Source: Phaeosaccion multiseriatum (taxonomy: Eukaryota > Protista > Ochrophyta, other classes). Taken from it: a stretch of 64,000 bases of DNA. Each line of letters starts with the position of its first letter. The stretch's first letter is position 1. The notes below the pieces were generated by a model. That model saw only the letters and a list, made by a program, of their open reading frames with translations. It ran no database searches and was not told the DNA's origin. Below, piece by piece: positions 1-56,554 of this stretch. The DNA is taken from the NCBI GenBank assembly GCA_965112735.1, contig OZ218951.1, positions 496,001 to 560,000 on the forward strand, in the 5' to 3' direction. The translations under genes were made by a program, and so were the position numbers.

Positions 1-1260
1 GACGTGAGCTTCATCGAGGCGCACGGCACGGGCACGCCCCTCGGGGACCGCACGGAGTGGGCTTCCATCGCCGGAACCTATGGAGACCACGACCTGGCAA
101 CAGCCCGCCGTCTCGTCGTTGGAGCGATCAAGACCAACCTTGGTCACGCGGAGGCTGCGGCAGGCATTGCAGGGCTCATCAAGACGGTGCTGGTGCTCAG
201 GCATGTCCAAGCGCCTCCCAACCTCAACCTGTCCACGCTGAACCCTGCACTGAAGACGGAGGGCAACAGCGCTCTGCTACCCATCCCCGGACGCATGACC
301 CCCATCTCTACCCGAATCGGAGGTGCGTTGGGGCCCTTATTCAAAAACGTTTCCTGTGACCACTCACTCACTCACTCACTTCACTCACTCACTCACTCAC
401 TCACTCACTCACTCACTCACTCACTCACTCACTCACTCACTCACTCACTCACTCACTCACTCACCCAATCACTCACTCACTCACTCACTCACTCACCCAA
501 TCACTCACTCACTCATTCACTCACTCACTCACTCACTCACCCAATCACTCACTCACTCACTCACTCAATCACTCACTCACCCAATCACTCACTCACTCAT
601 TCACTCACTCACTCACTCACTCACTCTCACTCACCCAATCACTCACTCACTCACTCACTCACTCACTCACCCAATCACTCACTCACCCACTCCCACTCAC
701 TCACTCGCGTCTTCTTGAGACAAGTTAAGGATTACTTTAGAGGGTATGAGCTATCGTATGATGGTAAATGGCTCAACCCGTTCTCACCATGCACTTCTGC
801 TCGCTGTGGTTACTTCTGCTCCTTTCGCAGCTGTCAACTCCTTTGGGTTTGGCGGTGTCAATGCCCACGTCATCCTGGAGGGGACGGCCACCTCACAAGC
901 GGAGAAGACCAACGTCAGAGCCTCCCCGTTCACGAGCAGAAAGGCCTTCAAGCTGCTGCCCCCCCCACCGACATCGGCGGCCGGAAAAAGCTCCTTGGCA
1001 GTAGAGCTCCGCGGTGTCAGTCCAGCCGAACGCCAAGAGAGGCTTCGATCCGTCATCTCCGACATCGCCCTCTCCAGCACGGCAGGCTCTGTCGGCATCG
1101 ACATGGACAAGCCTCTCATGGAGGCTGGCATGGATTCGTTGGCGCTCATGGAGCTGAGGCAGCGTCTGCACCTGCTCACGGACATTCCCGTTAGCAGTGC
1201 CGCCCTCTTTGCCCACCCCACCGTGGCGGCCTTGGCGGAGTGGTTGGGCTCGGCGCTCAT
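1..1260 (+). other. PKS module 0 (partial): KS C-terminal half followed directly by ACP; no AT and no reductive domains
   Basis: EAHGTGT, KTNLGH and [11 protein letters not shown], then a short linker and an ACP with the [10 protein letters not shown] phosphopantetheine motif (Ser codon 1136-1138). Confidence 0.85.
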
Positions 1261-4200
1261 GGAGGGAAGTGCGAGCAGCCTGCGCCTGTCCAGGAGGATG
1301 CCATCGTCTCAAGGGGGGGGCGACGCTTCTGCCCCGCTGGCAATAGTGAGCATGGCGTGCCGCTTCCCCGGAGGCGCAGACAGTCCCGACGCTTTCTGGT
1401 CCATGCTGCTGGAGGGAAAGGACTGCATCACCGCCATGCCCTCGGGAAGACTCACTGGTGCGGCGAAGGAGTGGCACGGAGGCTTCATCGACGGCGTGGA
1501 GATGTTCGACAACGCCACCTTTGGCATCTCCGTGGCTGAGGCCGAGGCCATGGACCCCACTCAGCGCATCATGCTGGAGGTCGGCTACGAGGCGCTGCAC
1601 GAGGCAGGCTTCTCTATGGCCACGCTGCGCAACAGCAACACCGGAGTGTTCGTCGGCTCCATGCAGCACGGCGACTGGGCCGCGCTGAACAAGGATGGTG
1701 ACACCAAAGCTCACTCAATGATGGGCGAGTCAGCGGGCTGCCCTGCAAATCGCCTGTCCTATGCACTGGGCTTGCGAGGCCCAAGCATATCTGTTGATAC
1801 GCTTTGCTCTTCCTCGCTCGTTGCCTTGGACACGGCTTGTCGCTACCTTCGCTTCGGCACGTGCGATGCTGCGGTTGTGGGAGGAGTGAACCTGCTACTC
1901 GGCTCCCGTTCCTTCGAGCAGCTCGACAAGGGAGGTTTCTTGTCCAAGGACTGGTACGTACGGGAGAATGGGGGGGCTGGCCTTGGGGAGCATCGAGCTC
2001 CTGTAACTCGAGTAGAGTCATAGAGTGCTTGCTGACAGGTAATCACAAGCATCATTCCTCTCATCGGCTTGTCCTTCCTTCTCTGCCCCCATCTGCCTCG
2101 TGCTGCTACCGAAGGCGCTGCAAGGCCTTCGACGCAGCGGCTAACGGCTACGTCCGAGGAGAGGGCTGCGGCGCCTTGGTGGTGAAGCGGCTTGACGACG
2201 CGGAGCGCAGTGGAGACAACATCCTGGCCGTCGTGCGGGGAAGCTCCGTGAACCACAATGGGCGCTCTATGCGGCTCACAGCACCCAGTCCAGACGCACA
2301 GCGGACACTGATTGAGGCAGCCTTGGAGGAGGCGGATGTAGCGGGCAGCGAGGTTCACTTCGTGGAGGCGCACGGCACCGGCACGGCTCTTGGCGACCCC
2401 ATCGAGATGAGCGCTCTCAAAGCCGCCTACGGAGAAGGGCGGGAGAGCTCTTTCCCACTCATGGTGGGAGCGGTCAAGACCAACATTGGTCACTTGGAGG
2501 GCGCCGCAGGCATCGCGGGACTCATCAAGACCATCCTCGCGCTTCAGCACCGAGCTGTTCCACGCAATCTGCACCTCGGCAAGCTCAATCCTGAGATTGG
2601 GGTTGATGGATTTGCGGTGGCATTCCCTTCGTCGAGACTATCTCCATTGGGTAGCGAGGAGGGACACCCCAATGACAGCGAGGAGGTGCTGTACGCAGGA
2701 GTAAGCTCGTTCGGAGCAGGAGGCACCAACGCCCATGTGGTGCTGAGCAGCGCTGCGCCGAGAGTGGAGGGAGGGGTCTCGAAAGCGCCGAAGGGGAGTG
2801 AGGATACGGAGGTCGCCTCACCTGCGCACGTCTTTGTCTTCACGGGGCAAGGCTCGCAGTACCCCGGAATGGGCAAGGAGCTCTACGACGAGGTTAGTTG
2901 ATTCGTTGCGCGCACCATCTCCGTCTCAGTCCTCTCTTGGCATCCATCACCTCGGCCCACCTGCCCTCGTTCTCATATTCGTCTCTCTCTCTCTTGTTCC
3001 CTCCGCTCTCTGTGTCTCTCTTTTGGTGCCTCAACAGCGTGCGGTCTTTCGCGAGTGCGTGCAGCGGTGCAGGAGGCTGCTCATGGAGCGGGCCTGGCTG
3101 GACAAGTCTGTGGTGGAGCTCATGTACCCGGCGGTCGCTGAGGACGGGGAGGAGGAGGAGGAGGGGGAGACTGCACAGGCGCTGCTGAAGGAGACACGCT
3201 ACTGCCAGCCGTGCCTGTTTGTGCTGGAATACGCCCTTTGCGCGCTGTGGAAGTCGGAGGGAGTGGAGCCGTCGATGGTGATGGGCCACAGCCTGGGCGA
3301 GGTAGTGGCGGCGTGCGTGGCCGGCGTCATGTCGCTGGAGGACGGGCTGATGCTGTCCGCCAAGAGAGGAGCCGCCATGCAGGCCTGCCCCGAGGGGAGT
3401 GGAGTGATGTTCGCAGTGAAAACGGGCAGGGAAGCAGCAATGGCAAGGATTGACGCTGCGGGGGTGGCAGGGGAGGTGGTGCTGGCGTCCTCCAACGGCC
3501 CTCAGGCCTGCGTGATCTCTGGTGCTCGCAGCGCTGTGGACAAGGTGGTGGAGAGACTCACAGCCGATGGGGTGGGCTGCAAGGCCCTGGAGGTGTCGCA
3601 CGCCTTCCACTCTCCTCTCATGGAGCCCGCTGTACGTGCGCTGGAGGAGGCACTGAGGCAGGTGTCATTCAGCGCCCCACGCATCCCCCTGGTGTCCAAC
3701 GTGACAGGCGAGGTGGTGAAGGCTGAGGAGGTGACGCAGGTAGCGTACTGGGTGCAACACATGCTATCGCCGGTGCTGTTCGTGGAGAGTATCACCACGC
3801 TGCTCCGGGAGAGGCCTGAAGGTGTACGAGTGGTAGAGATTGGGCCCAGCTCTGTGCTGATCAACATGGCGCGGCAATGCGAGGGAGAGAGGTCGGACGT
3901 GATGTGGCAGCCGTCCATGCGGCGGGAGGGGAGCGACACCGCCTCGTTCGACAGAGCAGTGGCGGCAGTACTGGGCAAGCCCACACCTCTGTTCCCCACC
4001 CGTCGTGCGCTCCCTTGGTTCGAGCAGCAGGCGCATGCGATGGTACCAAGCGGCGGCGTCGTCGAGAAGAAGGGAGGAACACTCCTCTCATGCCGCTTCA
4101 CCCCTCAGCTCAAGGGCTTGCTGCAGGATCACGCGGTGGGAGGAGTGGTGCTCATGCCGGGCATGGGGTACATCGAGATTGGCCTTGCCGCCTTGCTGAA

Positions 4201-7200
4201 GGGCAAGCCTTTCCCTAGCGAGACGCAAGTGGTCCTGAAGGGCCTGGTCTTCATGGCTCCACTGGAAATTGCAGGCGCTCGTGCCCCCGATGTGGACCGT
4301 ACGGTGGAGGGCTCCACCACTGTGGTCGCTTCTGAAGTCAGTGCCTTCGTCACTGCCCGCGGCAGCGTGCAGTTTATCGGAGGTCCCCACGGCAAGGCTG
4401 GAGAGACGGTGGCGAAGGCGACTTCCCTTCACTTGTGCACAAGGACGGAGGCAGAGACATTGGACGTGGCGCGGGTGAGAGCCGCGGTAGGGGACGAGGA
4501 CATCGCCGAGGGGCTCTACCTCAAGCTTGCCAGTGCTGGTTATGACTACGGTGCCAGCTTTGTCCGAACGCAGCACCTTTTCGCAGCCAGTGGACAGGCC
4601 TTGTCGGTTGCGGCGGCAATGGATGGCAGCCTATCGGCGGAGTGGGAGATCAACGGCTTCTACCTCCACCCTGCAGTGTTGGATAATGCCGCGCACACGA
4701 TGTTGGCGCTCTTGCCGGAGGAGCTGACGAGCAAGGCCTTTGCCGCCGTCTTCTTGCCCACCGGCTGCGAAGAGGTGCTTGTGCGAGGGGCCATCACGGG
4801 CGAGAAGGTGTGGGTTCATGCGGTGGTGAAGGAGGTGGACTCTCAAGCTCGTGCGATCGAGTGCGACATCGTGATAGCACACTTTGAGACGAAGCAAGTG
4901 CTCGTGCAGCTTAACCGCTTCCGGATGCAGCTGGCCCGAGGCTTCTCCCGCACCAACCCCGTCAGCCGAGCGCTGTATTCTCTAGAGTGGCTGCCCAACG
5001 ATTCCATCTCCCGCAGCAGAGGTGACGTGGAAGAGCGAGAGGAAGCTTGGCTGCTCCTCACCAGCGGCGCTCGTGGCAGCTTGGACAAGGCAGCGAAAGA
5101 GAGCTTGCCCATCTCTGTGACACTGACGGAGAGGGAGGTCAAGATCATCGACGACTCCACCCTCGCTTCAGAAGCGCCAGCAGGATGGGGCCGTGTGGTG
5201 TGCACCTTGTTCGGCGGCAAGCAGCAGAGCCCCAGCCAAGAGGCACAGACACTCCACTTGTTGCTACAGCAGCTCTTACGAAGGCCAGCTCCCTTGATGG
5301 TGCTGGTGCAGGACACGCTGAGTGGCGGCGAGGGGTGGAGGCATCACTGGGTGTACGGCATGATTCGAACCGCTCGTGTCGAGCACCCTTCGCTGGCCAT
5401 GACGGTGGTGGACGTGGGCAGCGAGGACCTGCCCAAGTGCTGGGCCATTGAATCACTGGGGCAGGACGTTTGGGTGCGAGACGGACGATATCTCACGCCT
5501 CAGCTGACTCGCTCCTCGGTAGTCAGTCTTCCCTTCTCCTTCGATCTCATGGCGAGGGGAAGCATCGAGGGAGGCTTGAAGCGCAGAGACGTACTCCCTT
5601 CCGAGAGAGACGCTGCCTTGCAGGACGGGGAGATTGAAATTTGTGTCAAGGCGGTGGGGCTCAACTTCAGAGACGTGCTGAATGTGCTCGACCTGTACCC
5701 TGGCGACCCTGGGCAGCCTGGCATCGAGCTATCGGGGGTGGTCACTCGAGCATCGCGAAACTCGCGCTTTCAAGTGGGAGACAAGGTCTACGGGTTTCCG
5801 GACAAGGGCTGCTTCTGCTCCCACGTAACGACACGTGACGTGTGTCTGGCCATCATGCCTTCCAACAGGACCTTTGATGACATGGCAGCGTTGCCTATCG
5901 CGTGGCTCACAGTGGTGCACGCCTTTGAGCAACTCGCTGGCTTGAAGCGTGGTGAGAAGGTGCTCATCCATGCCGCGTCAGATGGAGTGGGTCTGGTGGC
6001 CGTGCAGATTGCTCAGCGCATCGGAGCGGAGATCTACGCCACTGCTGGATCCGAGGAGAAGCACGCCTACTTGCGAGGCCTGGGCGTGAAGCACGTTGCG
6101 TCGTCGAGAGATGCGGAGGCCTTCAAGGCTACCATGGGAGCTGCAAAGGTGGATGTGGTGCTCAATTGCCTGTCCGACAACTTCATCCCTTACTCTCTGG
6201 AGCTGCTGACGAAGAACGGGCGCTTCATGGAGATCGGCAAGCGAGGCGTGTGGACCGGGGAGGCGATGAAGGCTGCCAGGCCCGACGTGCTGTACGAGCT
6301 GATTGCGCTGGACTCCATGATAGCAGACGACTTCAAGGCCGAGAAGCAGGGCTGGGGGTTCGCTAGGCTGGAGCAACTGACAGCGGACAGTGAGGCGGGC
6401 AGGGCCGAGGCGCTACCAGTGAAGACATTCGACTTGAGGGATGAGCTTGTGGAGGCAATGAACTTCCTCAGAACTGCGAAGCACATTGGGAAGGTTGTGC
6501 TCAGTAGCCCTGAGTGTGGCATTCCCGTCGTGCGAGATGGGACTTACGTTGTCAGCGGTGGGCTGGGGGCGCTGGGGCTGGCGACTGCGAAGCATTTGGC
6601 TGATAAAGGAGCTCGTCATCTTGTACTGCTCTCGCGAGGGGGAAAGGTCAAGGCGGACTCCCAGTCGCTGTGGGAGGAGCTTGTCACGGTGGCTGGCGGG
6701 GTGGGCACCAAGGCTGTATCGTGCGACGTGTCTAGCGCGCAGTCGCTTGAGAAGGCTCTAGGCACGGCGCTCAGTAGCATGCCGCCCGTACGAGGTGTCA
6801 TCCACGCTGCTGGCGTGCTCGACGATCGCTTGCTGGTGGACCAGACGCCCGAGAGTATCGAAGAGGTCTTCAAGCCGAAGGTGGAGGGCGCTTGGAATCT
6901 GCACGAGCTGTCGGTGCAGATGGCCTGGCCCTTGGACTTCTTTGTGTCCTACACATCCATGGCAGGTGTGCTAGGCAATGCAGGCCAGGCCAACTATGCT
7001 GCAGCCAACGCTGCTGTGGACGGGCTGATGCAGCATCGTCGGCGTCTCGGTTACTCCAGCTCTGTGGCCCTGCAGTGGGGGCCGTGGGGCGAAGCTGGCA
7101 TGGCCGCTCGATCCGAAGTTGCCATGGCCAGTCTGGAGATGGCCGGCGTTAGGCTCATCAGTAAGGCAGTAGGTATGGCGGCGCTTGATGCCGGCGTGTC

Positions 7201-10200
7201 GGCCCCATCTGCGGTATCGCGCGAGCTCTTGGTCCTGCCTGGCATGGACTGGCTTGCCTTTTCTCAGGCTGCTGGCAACCCGGGGATGCTTGATGCTCTC
7301 GTTAGAGAGGCTTCAATGGTTGGACCGCAGAACAAGGCTAGCAACAGTGTGACTACCGAGGTTAAGCGCGACCTACTGGAGCTTTCGAAGAAAGAGCGAA
7401 AACCCATGCTGCAGGCTTTAATCATGGAGATGGCAAAAGCATGCATTGGGGAAGCAGGCATCGAGCTCGACGCTTTGAGGCCTTTGATGGAGGCTGGGCT
7501 GGACTCCATGTCTACGGTGGAGCTTCGGAGTCGACTTCAAGCTCGTTTCGGCGTGCCTGTCCCCAACGACGTGCTCTTCAGTCACCCCTCAGTGGCAGCA
7601 CTGACTGTGTGGCTCGAGGGCTTGGTCTTGGGGGCTGAGGAGGGTGAATATGAGGAGAGGAATGCTGAACCGGCTGGAGGTAGCATGACTGCCCCCCTGG
7701 CTGTTGTGGGCATGGCGTGCCGCTTTCCGGGGGGCTCGAACAGTCCAGAGGCCTTTTGGTCAATGCTGCGCGCAGGTACTGACTGCATTCAGACTGCCCC
7801 TCTGAACCGGTGGGCGGGAAAAGAGGGGAGCGAGGATTGGCAAGGCAGCTTCATTGCTGAGGTGGAAATGTTTGACCCCGCCGTATTCGGCATCTCGTTT
7901 GCCGAAGCGGCTGCGATGGATCCGCACCAGCGAGTGATGCTGGAGGTTGGATACGAGGCATTGGTCAACGCGGGGTGCGACAAAGCAAGCTTGGCGGGCA
8001 GTCGGGCAGGCGTCTTCATCGGCATGATGAGCCTCGGCGACTGGGGCTACCAGGGCAAGGATGTAGGGGCTGGAGTATACCGCACTATGGGTCGCATCCA
8101 ATGTGGCGTTGCCAATCGGCTCTCGTACGTGCTGGGGCTGCAGGGCCCGTCCATGACCACTGACACGGCGTGCTCGTCATCGCTGGTGGCCTTGGAAAAC
8201 GCTTGCAGCAGCTTACGCATGGGCAAGTGCGATTCCGCTGTCGTCGGGGGCGTCAATTGCTTGCTCGGGCCAGTGGCCTTTGAGGACATTCAGGGCAGCG
8301 GCTTCCTGTCGCCGGACTGGTAAGTGCTTCCATTTTGTACCTCCGCACCAATGGTTCTGCTCCTCCGTCTCGTCCGACTTTACTTGCGCCGCCGACTAAA
8401 ACTCCCCTCACGCTACCCATGCCCTTCTCAGGCGCTGCAAGACGTTCGACGCGTCGGCAAACGGATACGTGCGTGGTGAAGGATGCGGTGCCGTTGTGCT
8501 GAAACGTCTAGATGACGCCCTCGCTGCCGGAGACACCGTCCTCGCTGTGATTGAGGGCTGTGCCGTGAACCACAACGGAACCAGTGCCCGCCTCACGGCC
8601 CCCAGCCCCGCCGCCCAGCAGAGACTCATCGAGGCGACGCTGCGTGAGGCCGGTCGAGAGGGCTCCGAGGTACGCATCGTGGAGGCACACGGCACGGGCA
8701 CATCTCTCGGCGACCCAATCGAGATGAGTGCTCTCAGGGCCACGTACGGAAAGAACCGTGACGACTCTTTCCCGCTGGTAGTGGGTGCGGTCAAGACCAA
8801 TATTGGCCATCTGGAGGGTGCGGCGGGCATTGCCGGGCTCATCAAGGCCGTCTTGATGCTGCAGCACCGCGCCGTGCCCGCCAACCTTCACCTCGAGAGC
8901 GTCAACCCGGAGCTGGCCATGGACGGCTTCCCCGTGCAGCTCCCGTCGGTGATGGTGCAGCTGGAGGACGAGGGAGACATGTTGGTGGGGGTGAGCTCAT
9001 TCGGGGCGGGAGGAACGAATGCACACGTGCTGCTGAGGAGCCATGGGGAGAAGAGTGACTCCGTACTGACGGCTGGTATGAAAAGCGATGGGGGCCCCTT
9101 CGTCAAGGAGGAGGCGCTCTTCCCGAATCGTGTGGCCTTCCCGTGGTACAAGAGCGATAATCACGCTTTATTTCCGAGTGGAGGGGTGCGAGATGAGAAG
9201 GGCGGGGTGCTGCTGTCCTGCCCATTCTCTCCAAGGCTCAAGGGCCTGCTGCAGGAGCACGCAGTGGGGGGGGTGGTGCTCATGCCGGGCATGGGCTACA
9301 TTGAGCTGGCCCTGGCCACGCTGCTGAGGGGCGAGGCCTTCCCCGCAGATGGCCAGGTGCGCATGAAGGGCCTCGTCTTCACGGCCCCGCTGGAGGTGGC
9401 AGGCGCCCGTGTGCCTGGCGTGGAGCGGATGGTGGATGGGTCCACGACGGTGGCATGCTCGGAGGTGAACGTGTTCCTCTCTGCCCACGGTAAGACGCGG
9501 ATCACGGGCGGCTCCCGCGGCAAGGCAGGTGAGGCTGTGGCCAGGGCGGCGTCAGTGGTGCTGGAGGCAAGAGAGGCTACTGCAATGATGGACGTGAGGA
9601 GCATCCAGGAGGCAGTGGGGCAGCGAGACGTGTCGGGTGAGCTGTACGCCACGTTCGCCAAGGCCGGCTTCAACTACGGTCCCCGCTTCAGGCGAACAGA
9701 GCGCTTGTACGCTGCCGAGGGACAGGCTCTGTCCGTGGCGACAGCGCAGGACCCCAGCCTGTGCTCTGAGTGGGAGGTGCGTGGATTCTACCTCCACCCC
9801 GCCGTGCTGGACAGTGCCGCACACACCATGCTTGCGCTTCTACCTTCTGATCTAACCAAGGGTGGTACGTTCTTGCCAGCTGGATGCAATGACGTGGTTG
9901 CGAAGGGCGCCATCAGAGGAGACAAGGTGTGGGTGCATACCGTGCTCACCGAGATCAGCGACAAGCGCGACAGCGTCAACTTTGACATTGTCATTGCCGA
10001 CTTTGACAGCCAGTACGTGCTCGTGACCATGAAGGGCGTCAAGCTGCAGAGGGCCAAGGGCTTTACGCTCCTGAACCCTCTTCGTCGAGCCTTATACTAT
10101 CTGGAGTGGCAGCCAGACAAGGCTCTGGCTCTGCCAACCACCACGGGGAAGGATGGTGTGGAGAAGGAGACGTGGCTGGCTTTGGTAGATAGAGTAAGTG

Positions 10201-25200: not shown

Positions 25201-28200
25201 CCAGGCAACCGAAGAGCAGCACGCATGGAGCAACCACAGAGCGTTGGAAGCTATCGGAAGCGCGGCGACAGCAAGTGGCGTAGAGGTGCACATGGTGGAG
25301 GCAGTCGGTTCCGACGCGCAGCCACGTGGGGCCCATCTCTTCTACTTGGCGTCAGCAGGGACGTGCTCTCCTACCGATGGGGCAATCCAGTTTGTGCAAA
25401 CTGTACAGAGCTTAGGCGGGGACGAGGCAGTGATGCCGATCACCGTGGTGACAACGGGTGTGTACAGCGGTGCTGGTTGGCAGGACAGCTGGGCAGTGGG
25501 ACTGGTGAGAAGCGTACGCCTGGAGCGGGGCGACCTCTCCGTGAACCACGTGGACCTTGAGTGCGCCATGTCTCCACAGTCTGAGGGTGCTCAACCTACA
25601 GTAGAGGAGATGGAAGTTCAAACTATCTCCCAGGCTGTGACGCTGGCTGCCGGAGCCTGCGGCGGAGGTCGAGGTGTGGACCTGCTGGTTCGAGGGTGTG
25701 AGATCCTCGCTCCGAGGCTGATGCCCAGCACACTCCATCTGACATCGGCAGGAGTCGATCGCCTCACGTGCAGGGAGGATGGGACCTACCTGATCAGCGG
25801 TGGCCTGGGGGGACTGGGTCTGGCGACCGCGAATCACTTGGTGTCCCAGGGCGCTCGATACCTGCTCCTCCTTTCTCGAAGCGGCCGGGCGGCAGAGGAA
25901 GTTTCAGAGCTGTGGCAGGCCCTGCAGAGTATGGAGAGTGTCACCGCTGTGGCCGTGGCCTGCGATGTCTCTGAGATGCATCAGCTTCGAGACGCTGTAG
26001 CCAACGCTTTGGTGGACCTGCCTACCGTTCGGGGTGTGATTCACGCAGCAGGGGTTCTAGATGACCGTAAGTTGGCGGGGCAGACCGACCAGAGCATGCG
26101 GAAAGTGTTCGCACCAAAGATTCACGGGGCTTGGAATCTGCATGAGCTGTCGCTTGAGTGGGCCGAGAGGGAAGAGAACTTGGACTTCTTCGCATCGTAT
26201 TCATCTACTTCTGGGATACTTGGTAACATCGGACAGACGAATTATGCCGCAGCCAACTCCGCGCTCGATGGTCTGATGCGCTACCGCCGCCAGCAGCTCA
26301 GGCTGGCGGGCACCAGCATTCAGTGGGGGCCCTTTGGTGAGGCGGGCATGGCAGCGAAGTCTACGACACTGCGGAGCCTTTTCGAGATGGCCGGAGTGGG
26401 CCTGATCTCATCGGCGCTGGGTATGAAGGCACTGGATGCCGTCCTTGCAAGTCAAGCGCAAGCCAACGTGCAGGAGGTGGCCGTCATGCCGGCCATGAGG
26501 TGGGGCAAATTTCGAGCGAGCTTGGCCCCTGTGCACAGCGATTTCCTCGGGCAATTGACAGACCGCGGAGAAAATGGCGAGGCATCAAAGGGCTACAGCG
26601 TCAACGCCGAGGTGCGGGAGGAGCTCCTGCTCTTACCGGAGTCAGCACGGCGGGAGAGGATCGAGCAGGTCCTGACGGACATGGTGGTGGAGTGCGTTGG
26701 CGAGGACTTCACCTTGGCAGCAACGATGCCCTTGATGGAAGCCGGACTCGATTCGATGGCGTCCGTAGAGTTTCGCAAGCGAATCGAGGCCTGGTGTGGT
26801 GTCACCGTTTCGAATGGCGCCTTCTTCTCGTCTCCATCAGTGTCTGCAATGGCCGCGTGGCTCGAGGCCCGGATTCTTGAGGTGCGGGATGATGTAGAGG
26901 GGGGTAAAGAGGTGCTGACAAGACAGCACTTGTCCTCGGACTCTCGAGCCCCCATCGCTGTAGTGAGTATGGCGTGTCGCCTCCCCGGTGGAGCCAATAG
27001 CCCGGAGCAGTTCTGGTCGATGATGTGCGAGGGCAGAGACTGCATTACGGCAGCGCCACCCGACAGGTGGGAGAGTAAGACGGGCGAGCTGCAGCTACAG
27101 GGAGGGTTCATCGAGGACGTGGAGATGTTCGACAATGCCTTCTTTGGCATCAGTGCTGCCGAGGCAGAGGCAATGGACCCCAATCAGCGCCTCATGCTGG
27201 AGGTGGCCTTCGAGGCCCTCCATCGCGCGGGCCACAGCAAGAGCAGCCTGCGGGGCAGCAACACCGGCGTGTTCGTGGGCTTGTCGGACACGGACTGGGG
27301 CTTCGTGGCAGGAGATGCCGCTGCTCAGAGTGCCTATGGCGGAATGGGCCTGACGGCTTCGAACATTGCGAATCGCGTATCCTACACTCTGGGTCTCTGC
27401 GGCCCCAGTGCGTTGCTGCAGACAGCATGCTCGTCGTCCCTGGTGGCTCTGGACGCTGCTTGCAGCAACCTCCGCCTGGGCAAGTGCGACTCGGCGGTGG
27501 TCGGTGGCGTGAACCTGCTGCTCGGGAAGAGCACCTTCCAGTCCTTGATTGCGGGGACCTTCCTCTCCCCCGACTGGTAAGTTGCTCTGGACACTCTGGT
27601 CTGTGAAGTCTGATTCATTTATCCTATTGCTGCTCTTGGGCGTCTTCTCTACAGTCAAACAAGACCTTCCGTTGCACCCCACTCACACCCCACCTATATT
27701 TCTCTACCTTGCGACAGGCGCTGCAAGACGTTTGACGCATCTGCAAATGGTTATGTCAGAGGCGAAGGATGTGGTGCCATTGTGCTGAAGCGCTTTGATG
27801 ATGCTATGGCCAGCGGGGACGCTGTGCTAGCGGTAATCGAGGGCTGTGCGGTCAACCACAATGGGGCCAGCGCTCGTCTGACGGCACCCAGTCCTCTTGC
27901 TCAGCAGCAGCTTCTGTCTGCCGCTCTGGCAGAGGCGGGAAGGGACCCCGCAGAGGTGAGCTTCGTGGAGGCGCACGGCACGGGAACGGCGCTGGGAGAC
28001 CCCATCGAGATGAGCGCCCTTAAGGCAGTGTACTGCGGACCGGACCGCAGCGAGGCAAATGCCTTGGTGGTAGGTGCGCTGAAGGCCAATATCGGCCATC
28101 TGGAGGGTGCAGCAGGTATTGCAGGCCTCATCAAGACCGTACTGGTGCTGCAGCACCGCATCGCCCCTCCGAACCTGCATTTGAAGGACATCAACCCCGA

Positions 28201-31200
28201 GCTGGAGCTCGCCGGCGTCCCTGTGACGCTGCCTGTGACCATGGAGCCCGTGGGTCAGGGCGGGCGGACAGGAGTGCTCGTTGCTGCCGTGAGCTCTTTC
28301 GGTGCCGGCGGAACCAATGCTCACGCCGTGCTATCCGGTCCCAGAGCTGGGAGTACGGCCGCGCATACCGACGGAGAGGGCGTCGGCTTCAACGATGCTC
28401 TTCAGAAGGACAGCGAGTCAGAGCGTGGCGCATTGTACCGCACACGCCAAGCGTTTCGTTGGTTCAGGCCTCCACTGGCATTCATGCCCAGCGGCGAGGT
28501 GGTCCAAGAGGGAGACGGAATGCGGCTCTCTTGCCCCTTCTCGCCTCACATCAAGGACCTTCTCAAGGACCACGCAGTCAACAATGTGGTGATCATTCCA
28601 GGGGTGACGTACATTGAAGTGGGTGTTGTCACTGCTCTAGAAGCAAGACAGCTCGGGGTGGAGCAGCAAGTCGTCCTGCAAGGAGCCAACTTTGTGGCTC
28701 CATTGGAGATTGAGGGTTTCCAGCACACGGGCACGGACAAAGCGCAGAGCCGCAATACTATTGTCTGTGACGGCTTGAGTGCTCTACACGCGAGCGATGG
28801 AAGCATGCAGTTTTTCGGAGGCGTTGAGGGTGACAAGGGAGCGACCGCGAGGATGGAACACGTGTCTGTCATGGAGCGAACCGAGCCGCGTGACATGCTG
28901 GATATAGAGGGAATCAAGGGGCGGGTAGGGACTGTGGACTTGGCCCATGGCCTGTACAAGGCCATGGCGGATGCCAACTTCAACTATGGCCCTCGCTTTG
29001 AGCGGAGTTTACAGATGTTCGCCAATGACGGAGAGGTGCTATCGGTCGTGCGTGCTCTCGACTCGGACCTGTGCGAGCCTTGGGAGGCGACGGGCTTTGC
29101 TCTGCACCCTGCGGTGCTCGACAATGCGACTCACTCACTTTTGCACGCAATCCCACGCCAGTTGTTGAGAGCGAGGGATGGAGCTCCATTCCTGCCCGTT
29201 GGCTTTGACGAGGTGATCGTTTCTGCCCCCATATCGGGAGCAAAGGTATGGGTGCACACGACGCTCGGTGAAGTGGAGCCCGGGGGCAACTGCGTCAAGT
29301 TTGACATCAAGATTGCCGACTTTGATAGCAAGCAGATTCTTTTGGAGATGCGTGGGTTCCGGGCTCAGCGGGCGAGAGGCTTTGTGCGCTCCAATCCGCT
29401 TCGTCGGGCGATGTACACGCTTAAATGGCAGACCACTGAGTCGTCTACACAGGAGGAGGCCCCTGGTAGTGATACTGACCCTGCTGAGGCGGCGGTGCCA
29501 CAGAAGTGGCTGGTGGTTATTCCACAGGACGAGAGGGAGGAAGAGATTTCAATCATTGCTGCAGTGCGGCACTGTGTTCCGGAGAACGTGCACATACACA
29601 CTCGATATGGGGGGATGGACGCCTCCTGGGATGATGGTGCTCTTCTTTTTGGAGAGGACGAGTGGGCTCGCGTCTTGTACGTGCCGATCTCTGGGGATGG
29701 CAAAGAAGACGCAGAAGGAAGCCCGCAAGCACGAGCGGCCTACGCTCTGCTATCGCTACTCAGGAGCATGTCCACTACGTCGAATGTGCCGCTGACGGTC
29801 TTGACGAGGGGCGTCCAAAGCGGCGAGGACTGGCGTGACAGCTGGGTGACTGGGCTGGTGCGGACTGCGAGAGTGGAGCACCCCTCCCTGCAGATTGGCG
29901 TGGTGGACCTCAGCGGCAAGAAGGACCAAGACAGCGAGCTTGCCTTAGGCTTGGCCTTCCCTACTGCCATAGAAGATGTGTGGGTACGCGACGGACAGTG
30001 CTGGGCTCCTCGGCTTGTACGTCAGCCCCTGCAGCTTCCCTTCTCAATAGATTTGAAGGCAAGAGGCAGCATTGCCGACGCTTTCGCCCTTCGCGATGAT
30101 GTGAACCATGGCAAACACCAGCCCCTTGACCCAGCTGGCAGCTCCGTACAGGTGGCAGTGAGGGCAGTTGGTCTTAACTTCCGAGACGTGCTGAATGTGC
30201 TGGACATGTACCCTGGCGACCCTGGAGATCCTTGCTCCGAGTTCGCCGGAGAGGTGATCAGTGTGGGAGGAAGCTCGCGCTTCAGTGTCGGCGATGCAGT
30301 GTTTGGCTTTGGCGATGCGGGATGTTTGCGCAGTCATGTGACGACGAGTGATGTGTGTCTGGCCGTGATGCCGGCCGTGCTGCGCTTCGAGCAGGCCGCT
30401 GCACTTCCCATCGTGTGCTTGACGGTAGTGAAGGCCTTCCACGACCTCAAGGCTGGAGAGAAGGTGTTGATTCACGCCGCATCGGGCGGTGTGGGTCTTG
30501 CCGCCGTGCAGTATGCTCAGCGGGTGGGCGCAGAGGTGTACGCTACTGCCGGTGCTGCTGTGAAGCATGACTTCCTCCGGAGCTTGGGAGTGGAGCACAT
30601 TGCGTCATCGAGAGACGCAGAGGCGTTCAAGCAGTCCATGGGTGAGGTGAAGGTGGATGTGGTGCTCAACTCACTGAGCAGGGACTACATTCCCTTCTCG
30701 CTGGCCATGCTAAGCGAGGGCGGTAGATTCGTGGAGATTGGGAAGAGAGGTGTATGGAGTCACGAGCAGATGCGCACCGCCCGGTCCGATGTGAGGTACA
30801 ACCTCGTCGCTGTGGACGCCATTGTCGAGTCCGACTTTTCGGCGGGTGAGCCGGGCTGGATAAGCGACGAGCTGCAGCATCTGGCTGAAGACTGCATGTC
30901 TGGCAATGTGAAGCCGTTACCGACCATACCATTTGACATGAGGGAGGATACCCAGAAGGCCATGGCACTCATGAGCCAAGCAAAGCACATCGGCAAGGTG
31001 GTGCTGACCAACCCCTCGTACGGTGTGCCAGTCGTGTCCGATGGCACGTACGTCATCAGCGGCGGTCTGGGCGCTCTCGGCCTCGTGACGGCCCAGCACC
31101 TCGTGTCGAGGGGCGCTCGTCACCTTGTGCTGCTGTCGAGGAGTGGGAAGGTCGCCGAAAGCATGACAGAGCAGTGGCAGCAGCTTCAGAACAAGGTGGA

Positions 31201-34200
31201 GCTGACAATCCATACTCCTACTTGCGATGTTGCTGACGCGGAGGCACTTCGGACTTGCCTGGGGGGCGTGCTGCCTCTGCTCCCCCCTGTACGCGGTGTG
31301 GTGCATGCTGCCGGGGTGCTGGATGATATGCTGCTGGGAGAGCAGACGGCGGAGAGCGTGATGAACGTCTTCCGACCGAAGGTGCAGGGGGCGATTAACT
31401 TGCACGAGCTTTCGTTGGCTTGGGCGACGGAGGAGGGGCGCGCTCCTGGCCTTGACTTCTTCTTTTGCTTCACATCCATGGCCGGAGTACTGGGTAACGC
31501 TGGACAGGCCAACTACGCTGCAGCGAATGCGGCTGTGGACGGGCTGATGCGGCACAGGCGACAGCTCGGGCTCACAGGGACGTCATTGCAGTGGGGGCCG
31601 TGGGCTGACGTTGGTATGGCTGCCCAGCTCGACATTGTTCAAAAACAGTTAGAGCTTGCGGGTGTGGGCACGGTGTCAGCAGAGCTCGGTATGGCTGCCT
31701 TAGATGCCGCTGCGATGCCGTCAGCGTACTTGGGCGATGTTGCCGTTCTGCCTGGGATGGACTGGGGCAAGTTTGCAGACAGCTTGGGTGCGTCCCGCGG
31801 CTCGTTCCTTCTGTCAGGGCTTGTCTCAACAGCAGCGGGCGCGTCGAGCAACACCGAAATCAACAATGAAGTGCGCGAGGCGCTCTTGAGACTGCCGCCT
31901 GGCGAGCGACTGCAATCAGTGCGATTGGCGGTGCTTGATATCGCCAAGGACCTACTTGGAGAGGGTTCCGAAGAGCTGGACGCGAACACGCCTTTGATGG
32001 AAGCAGGTCTTGACTCTTTGTCAACGGTGGAGCTGCGCGGCCGGCTACAGGCTCGCTTCGGGGTTGTAGTGACCACTGACGTGCTCTTCGCGTATCCCAC
32101 GGTAGCGGCGCTGGCAGTGTGGATCGAAGCGGAGGTGCTTGGCGAGGTAGAGGAACCCTCTAGCAGTCGCTCTGCGGCGATTGCTGCTGAAGCGCACCAC
32201 ACTGACTCAAGGGCGCCGCTGGCCGTCGTCGGGATAGCCTGTCGCTTCCCTGGAGGGGTTCAGAACCCCGAGGACTTCTGGGCTATGCTCTGTGCAGGGA
32301 CAGACTGTATTGGAGCCAGCCCACTTGGACGCTGGGCCGAGGAAGGTCAGAAGCAGTGGCAAGGGGGCTTCATTGATGGAGTGGAGGCTTTTGACAACAC
32401 CTTCTTCGGTATCTCTGCGGCCGAGGCGGGTGCCATGGACCCTCATCAGCGCGTCATGCTGGAGGTGGGGTACGAGGCTCTGCACAGGGCGGGATACCGC
32501 AAGGATACACTACATGGCAGCAACACGGGTGTGTTCGTGGGTATGTCCGGCAGCGAGTGGGGCTCAGTAGTAGACGATGCGAACAAGGGTGCGTACTCCG
32601 TCATGGGCATGTCCAATGCGAGTCCGGCAAATCGGATGTCTTACGTGCTGGGCCTCGGAGGGCCGAGCATGAGTGTCGACACGGCGTGCTCGTCGTCTTT
32701 GGTGGCACTGGAAGGGGCCTGCAGCAGCTTGCGACTGGGCAAGTGTGACATCGCCTTGGTGGGAGGCGTCAACTTGCTGCTGGGTACACAGTCGTTTGAG
32801 ACCCTCGCCGAAGGAGGTTTCCTGAGTCTTGACTGGTAAGTGCGTGTCTCTTCTGTGTGGGTGGGAGCTTGTTCTTGGGGCTGCTATGAGAGCCATATCA
32901 AAAGGCCCAAGCTGTCTGAAAGGCCCCTATTGCTGCTGATGGATTTCCTCTTGTCTGCTCTTCACTTTTGCAAACCCTCAATGGTCAGGCGCTGCAAGAC
33001 GTTCGACGCTGCGGCCAACGGTTACGTTCGAGGTGAGGGCTGCGGCGCCGTGGTACTGAAGCGACTGGACGATGCACAGGCCAATGGCGACCACATCCTC
33101 GCAGTCGTCAATGGCTGCGCTGCGAACCACAACGGGAGAAGTTTGCGCTACACTGCCCCGAGCCCTTCTGCTCAGCAGCGTCTGATGGAGCAGGCACTGG
33201 CGGAGGCCGGCTTGAGCGGTGTGGAGGTTGATTACGTGGAGGCGCACGGCACCGGGACTTCTCTCGGCGACCCCATCGAGATGAGTGCTTTGAGGGCCGT
33301 GTATGGCCATGGCCGTGAGGAAGCTCGGCCCCTGGTGGTTGGGGCGGTGAAGACCAACATCGGGCATCTAGAGGGTGCGTCCGGAGTCGCTGGCCTCATC
33401 AAAGCTCTGCTGGTCCTTCAGCACGGATCTGCTCCCCCCAATCTCCACATGAGGAAGCTCAACCCGGAGCTTCGTTTGGATGGCTTTCCGGTGACTTTGC
33501 CGTCTGCCATGGTGCCACTAAGTGCCAGGGATGGGGAGAGGCGTACTGCTGGTGTCAGCTCCTTCGGTGCGGGAGGAGCCAACGCCCATGTGGTGCTCAG
33601 CAGCTTCGGACCGACTCTAGTAGAGGAGAGCGAGAGCGGAGCCTTGCTGCAGCTTGATGTGCAGCAAAGCAAGAAGAGATCGCCGGTGACGTTCTTGTTC
33701 ACTGGACAGGGCTCGCAGTACGTGGGCATGGGCAGAGAGCTGTACGAGAAGGAGGGCGTGTTCCGCGAGTGCGTGCAGCGGTGCAGTACGCTGCTCATGG
33801 AGCGGGCTTGGCTGGACAAGTCTGTGGTGGAGCTCATGTACCCTGCCGCCGCTGAGGACGGGGAGGAGGATGAGGAGGAGGAGGAGACTGCACCAGCGCT
33901 GCTGAAGGAGACGCGCTACTGCCAGCCATGCCTGTTTGTGCTGGAGTACGCCCTGTGTGAGCTGTGGAGATCGGAGGGCGTGGAGCCGTCCATGGTGATG
34001 GGCCACAGCCTGGGCGAGGTAGTGGCGGCGTGCGTGGCCGGCGTCATGTCGCTGGAGGACGGGCTGATGCTGTCCGCCAAGAGAGGAGCCGCCATGCAGG
34101 CCTGCCCCGAGGGCAAGGGAGTGATGTTCGCAGTGAGGGCAGGCAAGGAGGCGACTTTGGCAAGCATCGACGCTGCGGGGGGAGCAGGCGAGGTGGTGCT

Positions 34201-37200
34201 GGCGTCGTCGAATGGACCGAGCGCGAGCGTGATCTCTGGAGCTCGCAGCGCTGTGGACAAGGTGGTGGAGAAGCTCACGGCAGATGGGGTGGGCTGCAAG
34301 GCCCTGGAGGTGTCGCACGCCTTCCACTCTCCTCTGATGGAGCCCGCTGTACTTGCGCTGGAGGAGGTTCTGAGGCAGGTGTCGTTCAGCGCCCCACGCA
34401 TTCCCCTGGTGTCCAACGTGACGGGTGAGGTGGTGAGAGCGGAGGAGGTGACGCAGGCGACGTATTGGGTGCAACACATGCTGTCGCCAGTGCTGTTCGC
34501 AGAAGGCATCCACACGGTGGTGGAGCACTGGATGGGAGACGGGAGGGGGGCTGACCTGAGCATCGTTGAGGTGGGCCCCAACCCTGTGCTGAGCAGTATG
34601 GGAGCCAAGTGCGAGCGTCGCGAGGGCCTGGCGTGGATCTCTTCTCTCACGCGCGGGAAGAGCTCTGAGGATTCGTTTCGAGTAGCTCTGAGTACAGTGC
34701 AGCAGCAAGAGAGTAAGGGCAAGGAGCACATCCTGTTCCCAACGCGCAAAGCCTTTCCTTGGTACACAGCGCGAGCCACAGCAGCACCTCAGCCGCGGAG
34801 TGAAGCTGAGCAGGGCCCGCTCTATGTTGTTGAGTGGGAGGCGGTGGGGGTGCCCACGGCTTCGCAGCAGGCTTCGCTGACCGGCAGCCTTCCGTGGCTC
34901 GTCGTGATTCCCCAGGCAGCTGAAGAGCAGCACGCTTCGAACAACCACAGAGCCTTGGAAGCTGTCCGAAGCGCGGCGACAGCAAGTGGTGTGGAGGTGC
35001 ACGTGGTGGAGGCGGTCGATTCAGACGCGCAGCCCCGTGGGGCCCATCTCTTCTACTTGACGTCAGCAACGGGCTCTGCTACCGATGGGGCAATCCACTT
35101 TGTGCAAACTGTACAGAGCTTCGACGGGGACGCGGCAGTGATACCGATCACGGTGGTGACAACGGGTGTGTACAGCGGGGCTGGTTGGCAGGACAGCTGG
35201 GCAGTGGGACTGGTGAGAAGCGTCCGCCTGGAGCGGGGCGACCTCGATATGAACCACATTGACCTTGAGTATGCCATGTATCCACATTCTGAGGATGCTC
35301 GACCTAGAGTAGAGAACATGGAAGCCCAAGCTATCTCCCAGGCTGTGACGCTGGCTGCAGGAGCCCGCGACGGCGGCCGAGGCGTGGACCTGCTGGTTCG
35401 AGAGTGTGAGATCCTCGCTCCGAGGCTGGTGCCCAGCACACTCCATCTGACATCGGCAGGAGTCGATCGCTTCACGTGCAGGGAGGATGGGACCTACCTG
35501 ATCAGCGGTGGTCTGGGGGGGCTGGGGCTGGTGACGGCGAATCACTTGGTCTCCCAGGGCGCTCGACACTTGCTCCTCCTTTCTCGTAGCGGCCGGGCGG
35601 CGGAGGAAGTTTCAGAGCTGTGGCAGGCCCTGCAGAGTATGGAGAGTGTCACCGCTGTGGCCGTGGCCTGCGATGTGTCCGACATGCATCAGCTTCGAGA
35701 TGCTGTGGCAACGGCCTTGGTGGGACTGCCTCATGTTCGGGGTGTGATCCACGCAGCGGGGGTGAATGGCGCAAAGAGAATGTTGTCGGGCGAGACGGAA
35801 GAGAACGTGCGAAATGTCTTTGCCGCCAAGGTCCAGGGAGGTTGGAACCTCCACGCGCTGTGCCTTGAGTGGGTGGCGAGCGGCAGGGAGGAGGTCGACT
35901 TCTTCGTCTCGTACTCATCGACCTCCGCTTTGCTTGGCTTGTCCAATCAAAGCGCCTATGCCGGGGCAAACGCTGCTTTGGACGGGCTGATGCGGTATCG
36001 CCGGCAGCAGCTTGGCCTTCCTGCTTCCAACGTTCAGTGGGGCCCATGGGGCGACGTGGGTATGGCGGTGCGGCTTGAGATGGCGTCGAAAGCTGCGGAG
36101 ATGGCCGGAGTGGGCCTGATCTCATCGGCGCTAGGTATGAAGGCTCTGGATGCCGTCCTTGCAAGTCAAACGCAAGCCAACGCGCAGGAGGTGGCCGTCA
36201 TGCCGGGCATGAGGTGGGGCAGATTTCGAGCGAGCTTGGACCCTGTGCACAGCGCTTTCCTCGGGCAGTTGACGGACCGCGGAGAAAGTGGTGAGGCGGC
36301 AAAGGGCTACAGCGTCAATGCCGAGGTGCGGGAGGAGCTCCTGCACTTGCCGGAGTCAGCACGGCGGGAGAGGATCGAGCAAGTCCTGACGGGTATGGCA
36401 GTCGAGTGTGTTGGAGATGACTTCACCTTGGCAGCAGAGATGCCCTTGGTGGAAGCCGGACTCGATTCGATGGCGGCCGTGGAGTTTGGCAAGCGAGTCG
36501 AGGCCTGGTGTGGTGTCACCATGTCGAGCGGCGCCTTCTTTACGTATCCATCGGTGTCTGCAATGGCTGCATGGGTCGAAGAGGAAGTGCTGGGAGCGGA
36601 CTCGGGGCCGCTGAGTGAGCTTGATGATCAAGCAACAGGTCTTTCGCACTACTCCTTGGATGCTGACGCCCCCGCGGCTTACCAGCAGGAGCACATGTAC
36701 CTTTCAGATATAGCACTGCGGACGACTGCACCTGGCGGGCAGAGCGCGTACAATCTCCCAGTGGTGCTGCCGCTGCCAGTCTCGCTGATCTCCGGACGAA
36801 CATCCGCTGAAATTGTGGACATGATAGCACAAGTGTTAGGCAGCATAGTGGAGCGACACGACGTTCTCCGGACGGTGCTTGAGTGGACAAAGCAGGGCTC
36901 TCTGAGGCAGGTTCAGCTTGGAATTACTGCAGCCGCGGTGGTGTCAGCTTGTCTCTCTTCTGCCGTGGCCAGCAGTGTTGGGGCGGCTCGGAGCCTGATC
37001 GAGGCCGATATCGCTCGTCCATTCGATTTGGAGCGGAGCCAGCCTCTATGGCGTACGTTGGTCGTACACCTCCCGCAGCAGAGCGGAGTGGAGGAGCAGT
37101 ATGCCGCGGTATCTACTTTCCATCATTGCATCTTTGATGGTGTATCCTACTTGCTCTTCCAGAGCGAGTTCAGGGCCACATGCGCAGCTGCCATGGCGGG

Positions 37201-46537: not shown

Positions 46538-46756
46538 TCCCTCTAGTACGATACGGACGATTGAAGAATGGGGCGATGATGTATTCTTGGCTGGTCCCGG
46601 ACCCATGATGTGATCCATGATCCACATGAATTTTTTCATGCTCCGCCTCCCCCAATCATACAACAGTATTCACAGAAAAAAAATTACCTATTACTAGTAC
46701 TACGGAGTATGTTTTATCTTCAATTATCGATGAAAAGCTCTCTGATATATGGGCAA

Positions 46757-49700: not shown

Positions 49701-49974
49701 CTACGGCATCCCGGATGCTCCTAAAGCGGCCATGCCTGACTCTGCTCTCCCCACCTCGCAAGAGCACAGCTGGCGAGGAAGCAAAGCGCGTACCCCGATG
49801 CCGCTGCTGAGCTCCTGCTGACCCGTCCCCCAGTGTTACTGCTGCACCCCATTGGCGGAGGCTAGCGTTTGCCTGGGCGGCATCAGCCGCTGCTGCAGCT
49901 GCATCTGCCGCTCCACAAAGCGCCAAGACAGTCACAGCCACAGTGGCGGCTACCACTGCTCCTGAGGCCTTCAT
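46757..49974 (-). CDS. CDS: Phosphatidate cytidylyltransferase (CDP-diacylglycerol synthase) with N-terminal signal/targeting extension
   Basis: Exons (minus strand) 49974-49447, 49243-49079, 48899-48793, 48510-48403, 48168-48057, 47444-47306, 47046-46757. Motifs [29 protein letters not shown] and the family signature [34 protein letters not shown]. Confidence 0.9.
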
Positions 49975-52707: not shown

Positions 52708-53374
52708 TTACAGACGCGCACAGAGCCTGATGAGGTGTTTGAGCTTGGCTATCCAGTCCTTGTGCAGCGACCAGTAGTTGCTGGACAGGTCCTGGTTCAC
52801 CGCCCCGGCGGTTTGCTGTTGTCCAGCCGGGTGCAAGTAGAGCAAAAAAAAACAGGCAGCAGCAGCGCACAAGGGAATGACGAAGTGCCTCTGTTAGACA
52901 GCGCTCGACTCAGAGGGCACACATGGCGGAGGCAGTAGCAGCAACGAGGATGAGGAGGATGTACGGAGAGGGACCGATCCGTAACCGCTCCCCCCCCGCT
53001 TTCGCCCTCCAGCAGGGCACAAGAGGAGCGCTGCACGCGTAGATAGGCGGCGCACACCCCTTACGTAACTATGCCCCAAGTCAAGTCACCACGTACCATG
53101 TCTCTGGCCTGCAGCGCGTGCACAAAGGTGGCCACCCTCTCCAGCACTTCGGACTCGAGCTCCCCCTTGCCCATCTTGTCGTAGAGCACGGCCACCGCCA
53201 CGTTCACCTGCCCCAGCATCTTCTTCTCAGGGGCGTTGAGCACCGAGCCCGTCAGCGCGGCGAGCATCTGATTCAGCGCAGCAACAATGGCGCCGCACTC
53301 GGCAGACGCCTGTGCAGCCGCGGGTGCGGTGACTGCGGGGTCCGTCGGGGCGGGCGCTGGGGATGGGGCTGCTG

Positions 53375-53408
<34 letters not shown>

Positions 53409-55663: not shown

Positions 55664-55727
<64 letters not shown>

Positions 55728-56514: not shown

Positions 56515-56554
<40 letters not shown>

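What the first reader, a model, noticed from the sequence alone, without database searches (positions are those of the whole stretch)
1..36595. Strict alternation of AT-less and cis-AT modules: a one-AT-per-two-modules PKS
Seen: AT presence across the 8 modules is -,+,-,+,-,+,-,+. All four ATs carry the catalytic GHSLG and malonyl-type HAFH. The complete AT-less KSs keep the catalytic Cys and both His residues, and their modules have full DH-ER-KR sets. Known: modular PKSs are normally either cis-AT (an AT in every module) or trans-AT (a free-standing AT), and no free AT is present in this window. Inference: each embedded AT may load both its own ACP and a neighbouring one, an intermediate architecture. 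Alternatively, the AT-less modules are non-elongating tailoring stations as in trans-AT dehydrating bimodules.
Basis: partly seen in the sequence, partly recalled or inferred. Interest (0 to 1): 0.88.

Follow-up and report, generated by a model that had tools for sequence, protein, structure and literature searches.

The report
Algal PKS with shared acyltransferases
A giant algal polyketide assembly line really carries a building-block loader (AT) in only every second module, but the neat alternation comes mostly from a tandem duplication, and related enzymes with too few loaders are already known, one of them shown to work, so this is a good test case rather than a new kind of enzyme.

Summary
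Observation confirmed. Window 1-46537 (+) is one 14-exon reading frame of over 14,764 aa, open at the 5' end: eight PKS modules with AT pattern -,+,-,+,-,+,-,+, two NRPS modules and a polylysine-synthetase-like membrane end. A spliced contig from another sample reads KS5 straight into DH5 with no AT. The strictness is largely a by-product: modules 4-8 are 2.5 copies of a 9.67-kb two-module unit, leaving five independent states (chance 0.1). The AT-less modules 3, 5 and 7 keep intact KS, KR, DH and ER sites, so they are not dehydrating bimodules. The gene belongs to a clade without the KS-AT linker domain (Chrysoparadoxa, chromerids, apicomplexans, dinoflagellates, some bacteria) whose AT patterns vary freely. 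Fungal LasD falls in this clade. LasC/LasD (ATs only in modules 2, 4, 7) makes its full product in a foreign host without an added AT (PMC13749307). Best reading (0.55): the AT-less modules elongate and get malonyl from the embedded ATs, directly or by ACP-to-ACP relay. A free AT elsewhere in the genome is not excluded (0.25). The scan noted mixed or alternating PKSs on other DNA of this genome (unchecked). New member of a known kind.

The parts
1..46537 (+). One PKS-NRPS gene, 14 exons, at least 14,764 aa, open at the 5' end
   Evidence: (spliced frame without stops)
1..1246 (+). M1 (AT-less): KS C-terminal part 1-880 (intron 323-830), ACP 1085-1246; no reductive domains
1334..7618 (+). M2 (AT): KS 1334-2745, AT 2830-3928, DH 4046-4930, ER 5597-6502 (NADPH motif GGVG reads DGVG), KR 6536-7102, ACP 7415-7618
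7694..12770 (+). M3 (AT-less): KS 7694-9035, 46-aa link, DH 9174-10052, ER 10755-11660, KR 11694-12260, ACP 12570-12770; paralog of M2 (ER 97%, KR 99%, ACP 82%)
12849..17197 (+). M4 (AT): KS 12849-14242, AT 14312-15283, KR 16109-16681, ACP 16997-17197
17282..22456 (+). M5 (AT-less): KS 17282-18664, 50-aa link, DH 18815-19702, ER 20426-21340, KR 21371-21949, ACP 22259-22456; KS-DH junction also read in a spliced contig
22547..26866 (+). M6 (AT): KS 22547-23926, AT 24008-24955, KR 25778-26350, ACP 26666-26866
26951..32125 (+). M7 (AT-less): KS 26951-28333, DH 28484-29371, ER 30095-31009, KR 31040-31618, ACP 31928-32125; KS and DH ~100% identical to M5
32216..36577 (+). M8 (AT): KS 32216-33598, AT 33686-34660, KR 35486-36064 (no LDD motif), ACP 36380-36577
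14312..36579 (+). Tandem repeat: unit AT-KR-ACP-KS-DH-ER-KR-ACP-KS of ~9.67 kb, about 2.5 copies, 92% nt overall with a ~3-kb stretch at ~100%
36668..43807 (+). Two NRPS modules C-A-PCP (C 36668-38068, A 38183-39868, PCP ~40040; C 40333-41799, A 41914-43576, PCP ~43742), themselves a duplicate pair
43892..46537 (+). Terminal membrane/hexapeptide domain resembling the Pls/PosA end (TIGR02353, E 1e-38, below its cut-off); no thioesterase or reductase

Best explanation
A collinear PKS-NRPS of a stramenopile-type alga in which all eight modules elongate with malonyl units. It belongs to a clade whose modules lack the KS-AT linker domain: the AT hangs on a 23-29-aa tether between the KS and the conserved post-AT motif (R..F.W). 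It can therefore be dropped cleanly, which has happened repeatedly. The AT-less ACPs are charged from within the megasynthase by the embedded ATs, either by a loosely tethered AT reaching a neighbouring ACP or by ACP-to-ACP malonyl relay. One AT+/AT- pair was then multiplied by tandem duplication, giving the strict pattern. Shown: architecture, intact sites, duplication, clade, missing linker domain. Inferred: elongation by AT-less modules (strong, from sites and from Las), internal malonyl supply (moderate), direct versus relay (open). Inferred product: at least 16 carbons added, with hydroxyls every four carbons (1,5,9-triol from M4, M6, M8), then two amino acids, released at a membrane.
For: Intact KS Cys/His/His and KR, DH, ER sites in M3, M5, M7. 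ACP3 (AT-less) is 82% identical to ACP2 (AT-bearing), and ATs 79-95% alike serve ACPs only ~51% alike, so these ATs tolerate both ACP types. KS3 (no AT) and KS4 (AT) are sisters (83% aa; C-half 94% nt), and AT presence changes 15 times among 56 KSs of the clade. An AlphaFold model of the Chrysoparadoxa KS-AT shows no linker domain, a low-confidence tether, pTM 0.65 at pLDDT 90, and rmsd 17-21 A to the listed solved KS-AT didomains. LasD (P0437 has the paper's H765 and E791) has the same linkerless layout and falls in the same KS clade (SH-aLRT 97, quick tree). LasC/LasD, with ATs in 3 of 8 modules, makes a nine-C2-unit product in Aspergillus oryzae without an added AT, and ACP-to-ACP malonyl transfer was shown (PMC13749307). 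No free AT in the window. The two named eukaryote hits of a search for short AT homologs are PKS fragments.
Against: No biochemistry on this enzyme, and the rest of the genome could not be searched for a free AT. Some clade members have runs of 2-4 AT-less modules (Chromera Cvel_19857 --+, marine L011 ---+, P0394 ----), which a strict next-neighbour rule cannot serve. An unchecked scan note (s1-365138) lists a FAAL-ACP-KS-ACP gene in this genome with no AT in its stated layout, which would need malonyl from outside. In Las the host's own malonyl transferases were not excluded, as far as I read, and the relay was shown only towards the loading ACP. Las KSs are long branches in a quick tree. The structural model is of a relative and its domain orientation is uncertain.
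Confidence: 0.55

Rival explanations
1. All modules elongate, but AT-less ACPs are loaded by a free-standing cytosolic malonyl transferase encoded elsewhere. The embedded ATs serve only their own modules (an ordinary cis/trans hybrid on the way to trans-AT).
For: Most algal modular PKSs are AT-less and are thought to rely on a trans AT (PMC4661987). Clade members with long AT-less runs exist. FabD can replace an inactivated cis AT in vitro (PMC10204065). Unchecked note s1-365138.
Against: No free AT in the window. No free-standing relative of this AT type among named eukaryote hits. The four ATs are kept intact and homogenised (91-95% for AT4/6/8). Las needs no added AT. No free AT in view beside the bacterial +--+ clusters (flanks short).
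Confidence: 0.25
2. AT-less ACPs load themselves from malonyl-CoA (self-acylation).
For: Self-acylation is reported for three of four ACPs of Toxoplasma TgPKS2 (10.1101/2023.05.23.541938), an apicomplexan PKS; apicomplexan PKSs sit in the same KS clade.
Against: ACP3 is barely different from ACP2, which has its own AT, and ACPs do not sort by AT presence. Self-acylation is usually slow (own knowledge).
Confidence: 0.08
3. Stuttering: each AT module condenses twice and passes the second beta-keto product to the AT-less module, whose KS only transfers and whose KR-DH-ER reduce it. The product is the same as in the collinear model.
For: Proposed for conglobatin, where AT3 is dead but KS3 keeps its triad (PMC4504003). 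M3, M5 and M7 each follow an AT module.
Against: It cannot serve AT-less first modules, which are common in the clade (Chrysoparadoxa P0002, Chromera, Las module 1). A fully reducing M2 would have to skip its own reductions in round two.
Confidence: 0.07
4. AT-less modules are non-elongating tailoring stations (dehydrating-bimodule style) that dehydrate and reduce the hydroxyl made upstream, giving a shorter, mostly saturated chain.
For: M5 and M7 follow KR-only modules, the order seen in dehydrating bimodules. ER2 carries a possibly inactivating Gly-to-Asp change that M3 could cover.
Against: The KS His residues are intact, and the KRs keep NADPH motif, LDD, Lys and Tyr despite ~40% divergence from other KRs. 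M3 follows a module that already has DH and ER. In Las all modules elongate.
Confidence: 0.05

Closest known systems
Fungal modular PKS LasC/LasD (strasseriolide C), Lasiodiplodia; PMC13749307
   Same: Eight modules, ATs in only some (2, 4, 7; pattern -+-+--+-, the first five as here). Same linkerless KS-AT and KS-DH joins with the R..FPW motif, same KS clade, no trans-AT identified.
   Different: Two proteins, MT domains, four tandem ACPs in module 2, thioesterase release. Here: one polypeptide, no MT found, single ACPs, NRPS modules and a Pls-like end; the strict pattern comes from a recent duplication.
Linkerless protist PKS/FAS-I of Chrysoparadoxa australica, Chromera, Gregarina, coccidians and dinoflagellates
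   Same: Closest sequences (KS sister group Chrysoparadoxa, support 87-90). AT tether 13-39 aa. Mixed AT+/AT- modules with intact KSs. Missing ATs in chromerid enzymes are noted in PMC7464705.
   Different: Patterns irregular (-+, --+, ++-, ---+); none seen with eight alternating modules; products unknown.
Algal trans-AT modular PKSs (Shelest 2015, PMC4661987)
   Same: Algal giant PKSs that grow by module duplication and lose ATs.
   Different: Those have no embedded AT at all; here four intact ATs remain.
Bacterial cis/trans hybrid assembly lines (473 of 8799, PMC10394414), e.g. Melittangium P0035, Opitutus P0038, and a linkerless +--+ NRPS-PKS in Marinagarivorans, Acinetobacter and others
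   Same: One intact AT beside an AT-less module with an intact KS on the same protein (about 20 of 120 hits); no free AT within 10 kb in Melittangium.
   Different: Most keep the ~100-aa linker domain or AT remnants; only the +--+ group is linkerless and in this clade.
Bacterial trans-AT PKSs and their dehydrating bimodules
   Same: AT-less KS-DH modules.
   Different: Separate KS clade (support 99), KS-DH gap ~200 aa with flanking subdomain versus ~50 here; bimodule KS0 lacks the His that is present here.

Membership tests
Canonical cis-AT modular PKS | An AT in every extension module | tested here: not met
   4 of 8 modules lack any AT or remnant
Canonical cis-AT modular PKS | ~100-aa KS-AT linker domain fixing the didomain | tested here: not met
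   KS-AT gap 23-29 aa versus 88-130 in bacteria; no linker domain in the model of a relative
Canonical cis-AT modular PKS | KS and AT of cis-AT type | tested here: met
   KSs on the cis side of the split from trans-AT KSs; best AT hits are modular ATs, FabD model below cut-off
Trans-AT PKS | No embedded AT | tested here: not met
   Four intact ATs
Trans-AT PKS | KS in the trans-AT clade with flanking subdomain | tested here: not met
Trans-AT PKS | A free-standing AT serves the modules | not testable with these tools
   None in the window; the genome could not be searched directly
Dehydrating bimodule | Second KS non-elongating (no HGTGT His) and no KR of its own | tested here: not met
   KS3, 5, 7 keep Cys/His/His; their KRs are intact
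Linkerless mixed-AT PKS clade (protists, LasC/LasD, some bacteria; my working name) | Short KS-AT and KS-DH joins with the R..F.W motif | tested here: met
   Motif after all eight KS/AT units and in relatives
Linkerless mixed-AT PKS clade (protists, LasC/LasD, some bacteria; my working name) | KS in the same clade as these enzymes | tested here: met
   SH-aLRT 96-97 in two quick trees; Las rows are long branches
Las-type internal malonyl supply | AT-less modules elongate without a dedicated trans-AT | not testable with these tools
   Needs expression and loading assays

The most novel reading that the evidence does not exclude
Loss of the KS-AT linker domain turned the AT into a mobile arm that directly loads the ACPs of neighbouring modules in this whole clade, and the duplicated AT+/AT- pair is a selected functional unit. 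I found no paper that links the missing linker domain to AT sharing, or that groups Las, algal, apicomplexan and these bacterial enzymes on this feature (limited search).
Probability: 0.3. Interest if true: 0.62.

Novelty: new member of a known kind. Interest (0 to 1): 0.4.

Why it matters
How AT-less modules are fed when no trans-AT is known was left open by the only characterised enzyme of this clade (LasC/LasD). This gene gives a clean natural test: near-identical modules with and without an AT (M2/M3), single ACPs, and a repeated two-module unit. The answer bears on predicting products of giant algal, dinoflagellate and apicomplexan PKSs, on the proposed cis-to-trans route of PKS evolution, and on engineering modules with detachable ATs. 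The alternation itself is not surprising once the duplication is seen.

Tried and rejected
Cryptic AT exons: introns too short, six-frame scan blank, spliced contig has none. Assembly artefact: three different AT-less junctions, all in frame, one read independently. The ~3-kb stretch at ~100% between M5 and M7 may be recent conversion or polishing; no contig spans the repeat, so copy number is not independently confirmed. Alternation as a family rule: rejected; adjacency of every AT-less module to an AT module holds in several systems but has chance 0.07-0.67 and clear exceptions. Free-standing AT relatives: the Vitrella 461-aa hit is a mis-split PKS piece and the Chrysoparadoxa 516-aa hit is a KS-AT fragment at a contig end. 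The representative search with a DH profile returned mostly bacterial trans-AT proteins. The first metagenome scan found nothing. Scan notes gave no FabD or free-AT entry, which is uninformative. The nemamide paper did not address AT sharing.

Full report
Gene. The + strand from 1 to 46537 is one gene. Thirteen GT-AG introns of 84-508 nt join 14 exons into 14,764 codons without a stop; the frame is open at the 5' end. Seven KS domains share a phase-2 intron at the same place. Profiles built from the window and its homologs give: KS(part)-ACP | KS-AT-DH-ER-KR-ACP | KS-DH-ER-KR-ACP | KS-AT-KR-ACP | KS-DH-ER-KR-ACP | KS-AT-KR-ACP | KS-DH-ER-KR-ACP | KS-AT-KR-ACP | C-A-PCP | C-A-PCP | Pls/PosA-like membrane end. 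The source is a eukaryote: the genes downstream read as intron-rich housekeeping genes, and the closest named proteins are from the ochrophyte Chrysoparadoxa australica.

Observation. The AT pattern is -,+,-,+,-,+,-,+. All four ATs keep GQGSQ, GHSLG, the Arg and HAFH; KS2-8 keep Cys, His, His; KR, DH and ER sites of modules 3, 5 and 7 are intact. The AT-less joins are clean: 46-50 aa from KS to DH, with no remnant. A contig of run X5, a different sample and study, is 96% identical, is joined exactly across intron 17908-18048 and runs from KS5 into DH5 without a gap; a loose end at 23167 matches the next exon. The run's type is only guessed as DNA and it may hold a paralog or another strain. 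It most simply shows a spliced transcript with an AT-less junction.

Is the strictness more than chance? Only weakly. 13635-26865 matches 23313-36579 at 92%. The unit starts at AT4 and is AT-KR-ACP-KS-DH-ER-KR-ACP-KS, about 9.67 kb, present 2.5 times, with patchy identity up to 100% over 3 kb. Five independent states remain; strict alternation of two ATs among five has chance 0.1. Modules 2 and 3 are also a duplicate pair (ER 97%, KR 99%, ACP 82%; KS3/KS4 83%), one with and one without the AT.

Family. The KS-AT gap is 23-29 aa, against about 100 in bacterial cis-AT modules, and the post-AT motif R..F.W follows every KS or AT, so the AT sits as a cassette in a scaffold without the linker domain. 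An AlphaFold model of the Chrysoparadoxa KS-AT shows two confident domains joined by a low-confidence loop, no linker domain, and rmsd 17-21 A to the listed solved KS-AT structures; the orientation itself is not reliable. In KS trees the window's KSs form one clade (100), sister to Chrysoparadoxa, inside a linkerless clade (96-97) with chromerids, apicomplexans and dinoflagellates, on the cis-AT side of the split from bacterial trans-AT KSs. AT presence changes 15 times among 56 KSs. Patterns seen: Chrysoparadoxa -+, Chromera --+ and -+, Gregarina -+, marine contigs ---+, three dinoflagellates ++-, Cystoisospora x+- (x = dead AT), and a bacterial NRPS-PKS +--+ in at least five lineages. About 20 of 120 hits, mostly bacterial, also pair an intact AT module with an AT-less module whose KS is intact.

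Key precedent. LasC/LasD of Lasiodiplodia has ATs only in modules 2, 4 and 7 of eight. The two genes alone give strasseriolide C, with nine intact C2 units, in Aspergillus oryzae. The authors found no trans-AT, showed malonyl transfer from module-2 ACPs to the loading ACP, and suggest such relays feed the other AT-less modules (PMC13749307). P0437 carries the paper's H765 and E791, so I take it as LasD. It has the same short joins and motif and falls in the same clade, as long branches in a quick tree. Mixed lines are 473 of 8799 catalogued assembly lines (PMC10394414), and AT displacement with module duplication is the published model for algal PKSs (PMC4661987).

Mechanism. Most likely (0.55) all modules elongate and the embedded ATs supply the AT-less ACPs from inside the protein. 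ACP3 is nearly ACP2, the same AT type serves two ACP classes only ~51% alike, and ACPs do not sort by AT presence, so compatibility is not a barrier. Direct loading by a tethered AT and ACP-to-ACP relay cannot be told apart from sequence. A free AT remains possible (0.25): relatives with long AT-less runs need something beyond next neighbours, and an unchecked scan note describes a small PKS in this genome with no AT in its stated layout. Self-acylation (TgPKS2), stuttering (conglobatin) and non-elongating stations are less likely. The inferred product carries hydroxyls every four carbons from M4, M6 and M8, then two amino acids; ER2 has a Gly-to-Asp change in its NADPH motif and may leave a double bond.

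Verdict. Real, apparently expressed, and a clean system for a question left open by the Las study. The headline pattern is a duplication product and the mixed architecture is known. New member of a known kind; interest 0.4.

Noticed in passing
window 43892-46537: The line ends in a membrane domain with hexapeptide repeats resembling the Pls/PosA terminal domain, not a thioesterase or reductase; scan notes list several other PKS genes of this genome with the same end.
   Followed up: partly
window 5969-5992: ER2 NADPH motif reads HAASDGVG (codon GAT) where ER3, 97% identical, has HAASGGVG: possibly an inactive ER, or a sequence error.
   Followed up: partly
window 3044-3782: The AT2 core is ~89% nt identical to AT4/6/8 while its flanks are 50-70%; the tract starts right after the AT2-only intron 2893-3037, which looks like gene conversion between ATs.
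   Followed up: partly
window 17518-20217 vs ~27187-29886: About 3 kb, intron included, is ~100% identical between repeat copies while the ER that follows differs at 54 codons: recent conversion or assembly polishing.
   Followed up: partly
window 35486-36064: KR8 lacks the LDD motif present in KR2-7, so the last hydroxyl may have the opposite configuration.
   Followed up: no
window 37463-43579: The two NRPS modules are a duplicate pair (92% nt over the A domains) that differ around the substrate pocket.
   Followed up: no
L089, L090, L091, L092, L094 (whole loci); P0415: A conserved linkerless NRPS-PKS with AT pattern +--+ occurs in scattered bacteria (Paracoccaceae, Marinagarivorans, Xanthomonas, a deltaproteobacterium, Neptunochlamydia, Acinetobacter); its KSs nest in the protist clade. 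L089 and L090 have nearly identical coordinates, so one may be a mis-binned contig.
   Followed up: partly
L007 and L011 (contig Ga0247598_1000001): A 47.6-kb marine contig, apparently without introns, encodes a linkerless PKS of over 14,896 aa; only its last module has an AT in the 20 kb seen.
   Followed up: partly
P0392, P0393, P0395, P0396: Module 1 of the Toxoplasma, Cystoisospora and Chromera type I FAS-like proteins has a full-length AT without the GHSxG motif; Chrysoparadoxa P0029 likewise (GHGLG).
   Followed up: no
L088 2283-21143: Melittangium cluster: three PKS genes and a P450, one AT-less elongating module and no free AT within 10 kb; product not identified.
   Followed up: partly
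window 17300-23290: Runs X1 and X4 lay thousands of variant contigs here, deepest over ER-KR-ACP, which suggests many paralogous modules in the genome.
   Followed up: no
window 46700-59700 (- strand): Intron-rich housekeeping genes, by eye a phosphatidate cytidylyltransferase-like gene and a Sec31-like WD40 gene; no tailoring genes recognised next to the PKS.
   Followed up: no
window 361-706: Intron 1 holds a ~350-nt TCAC microsatellite.
   Followed up: no
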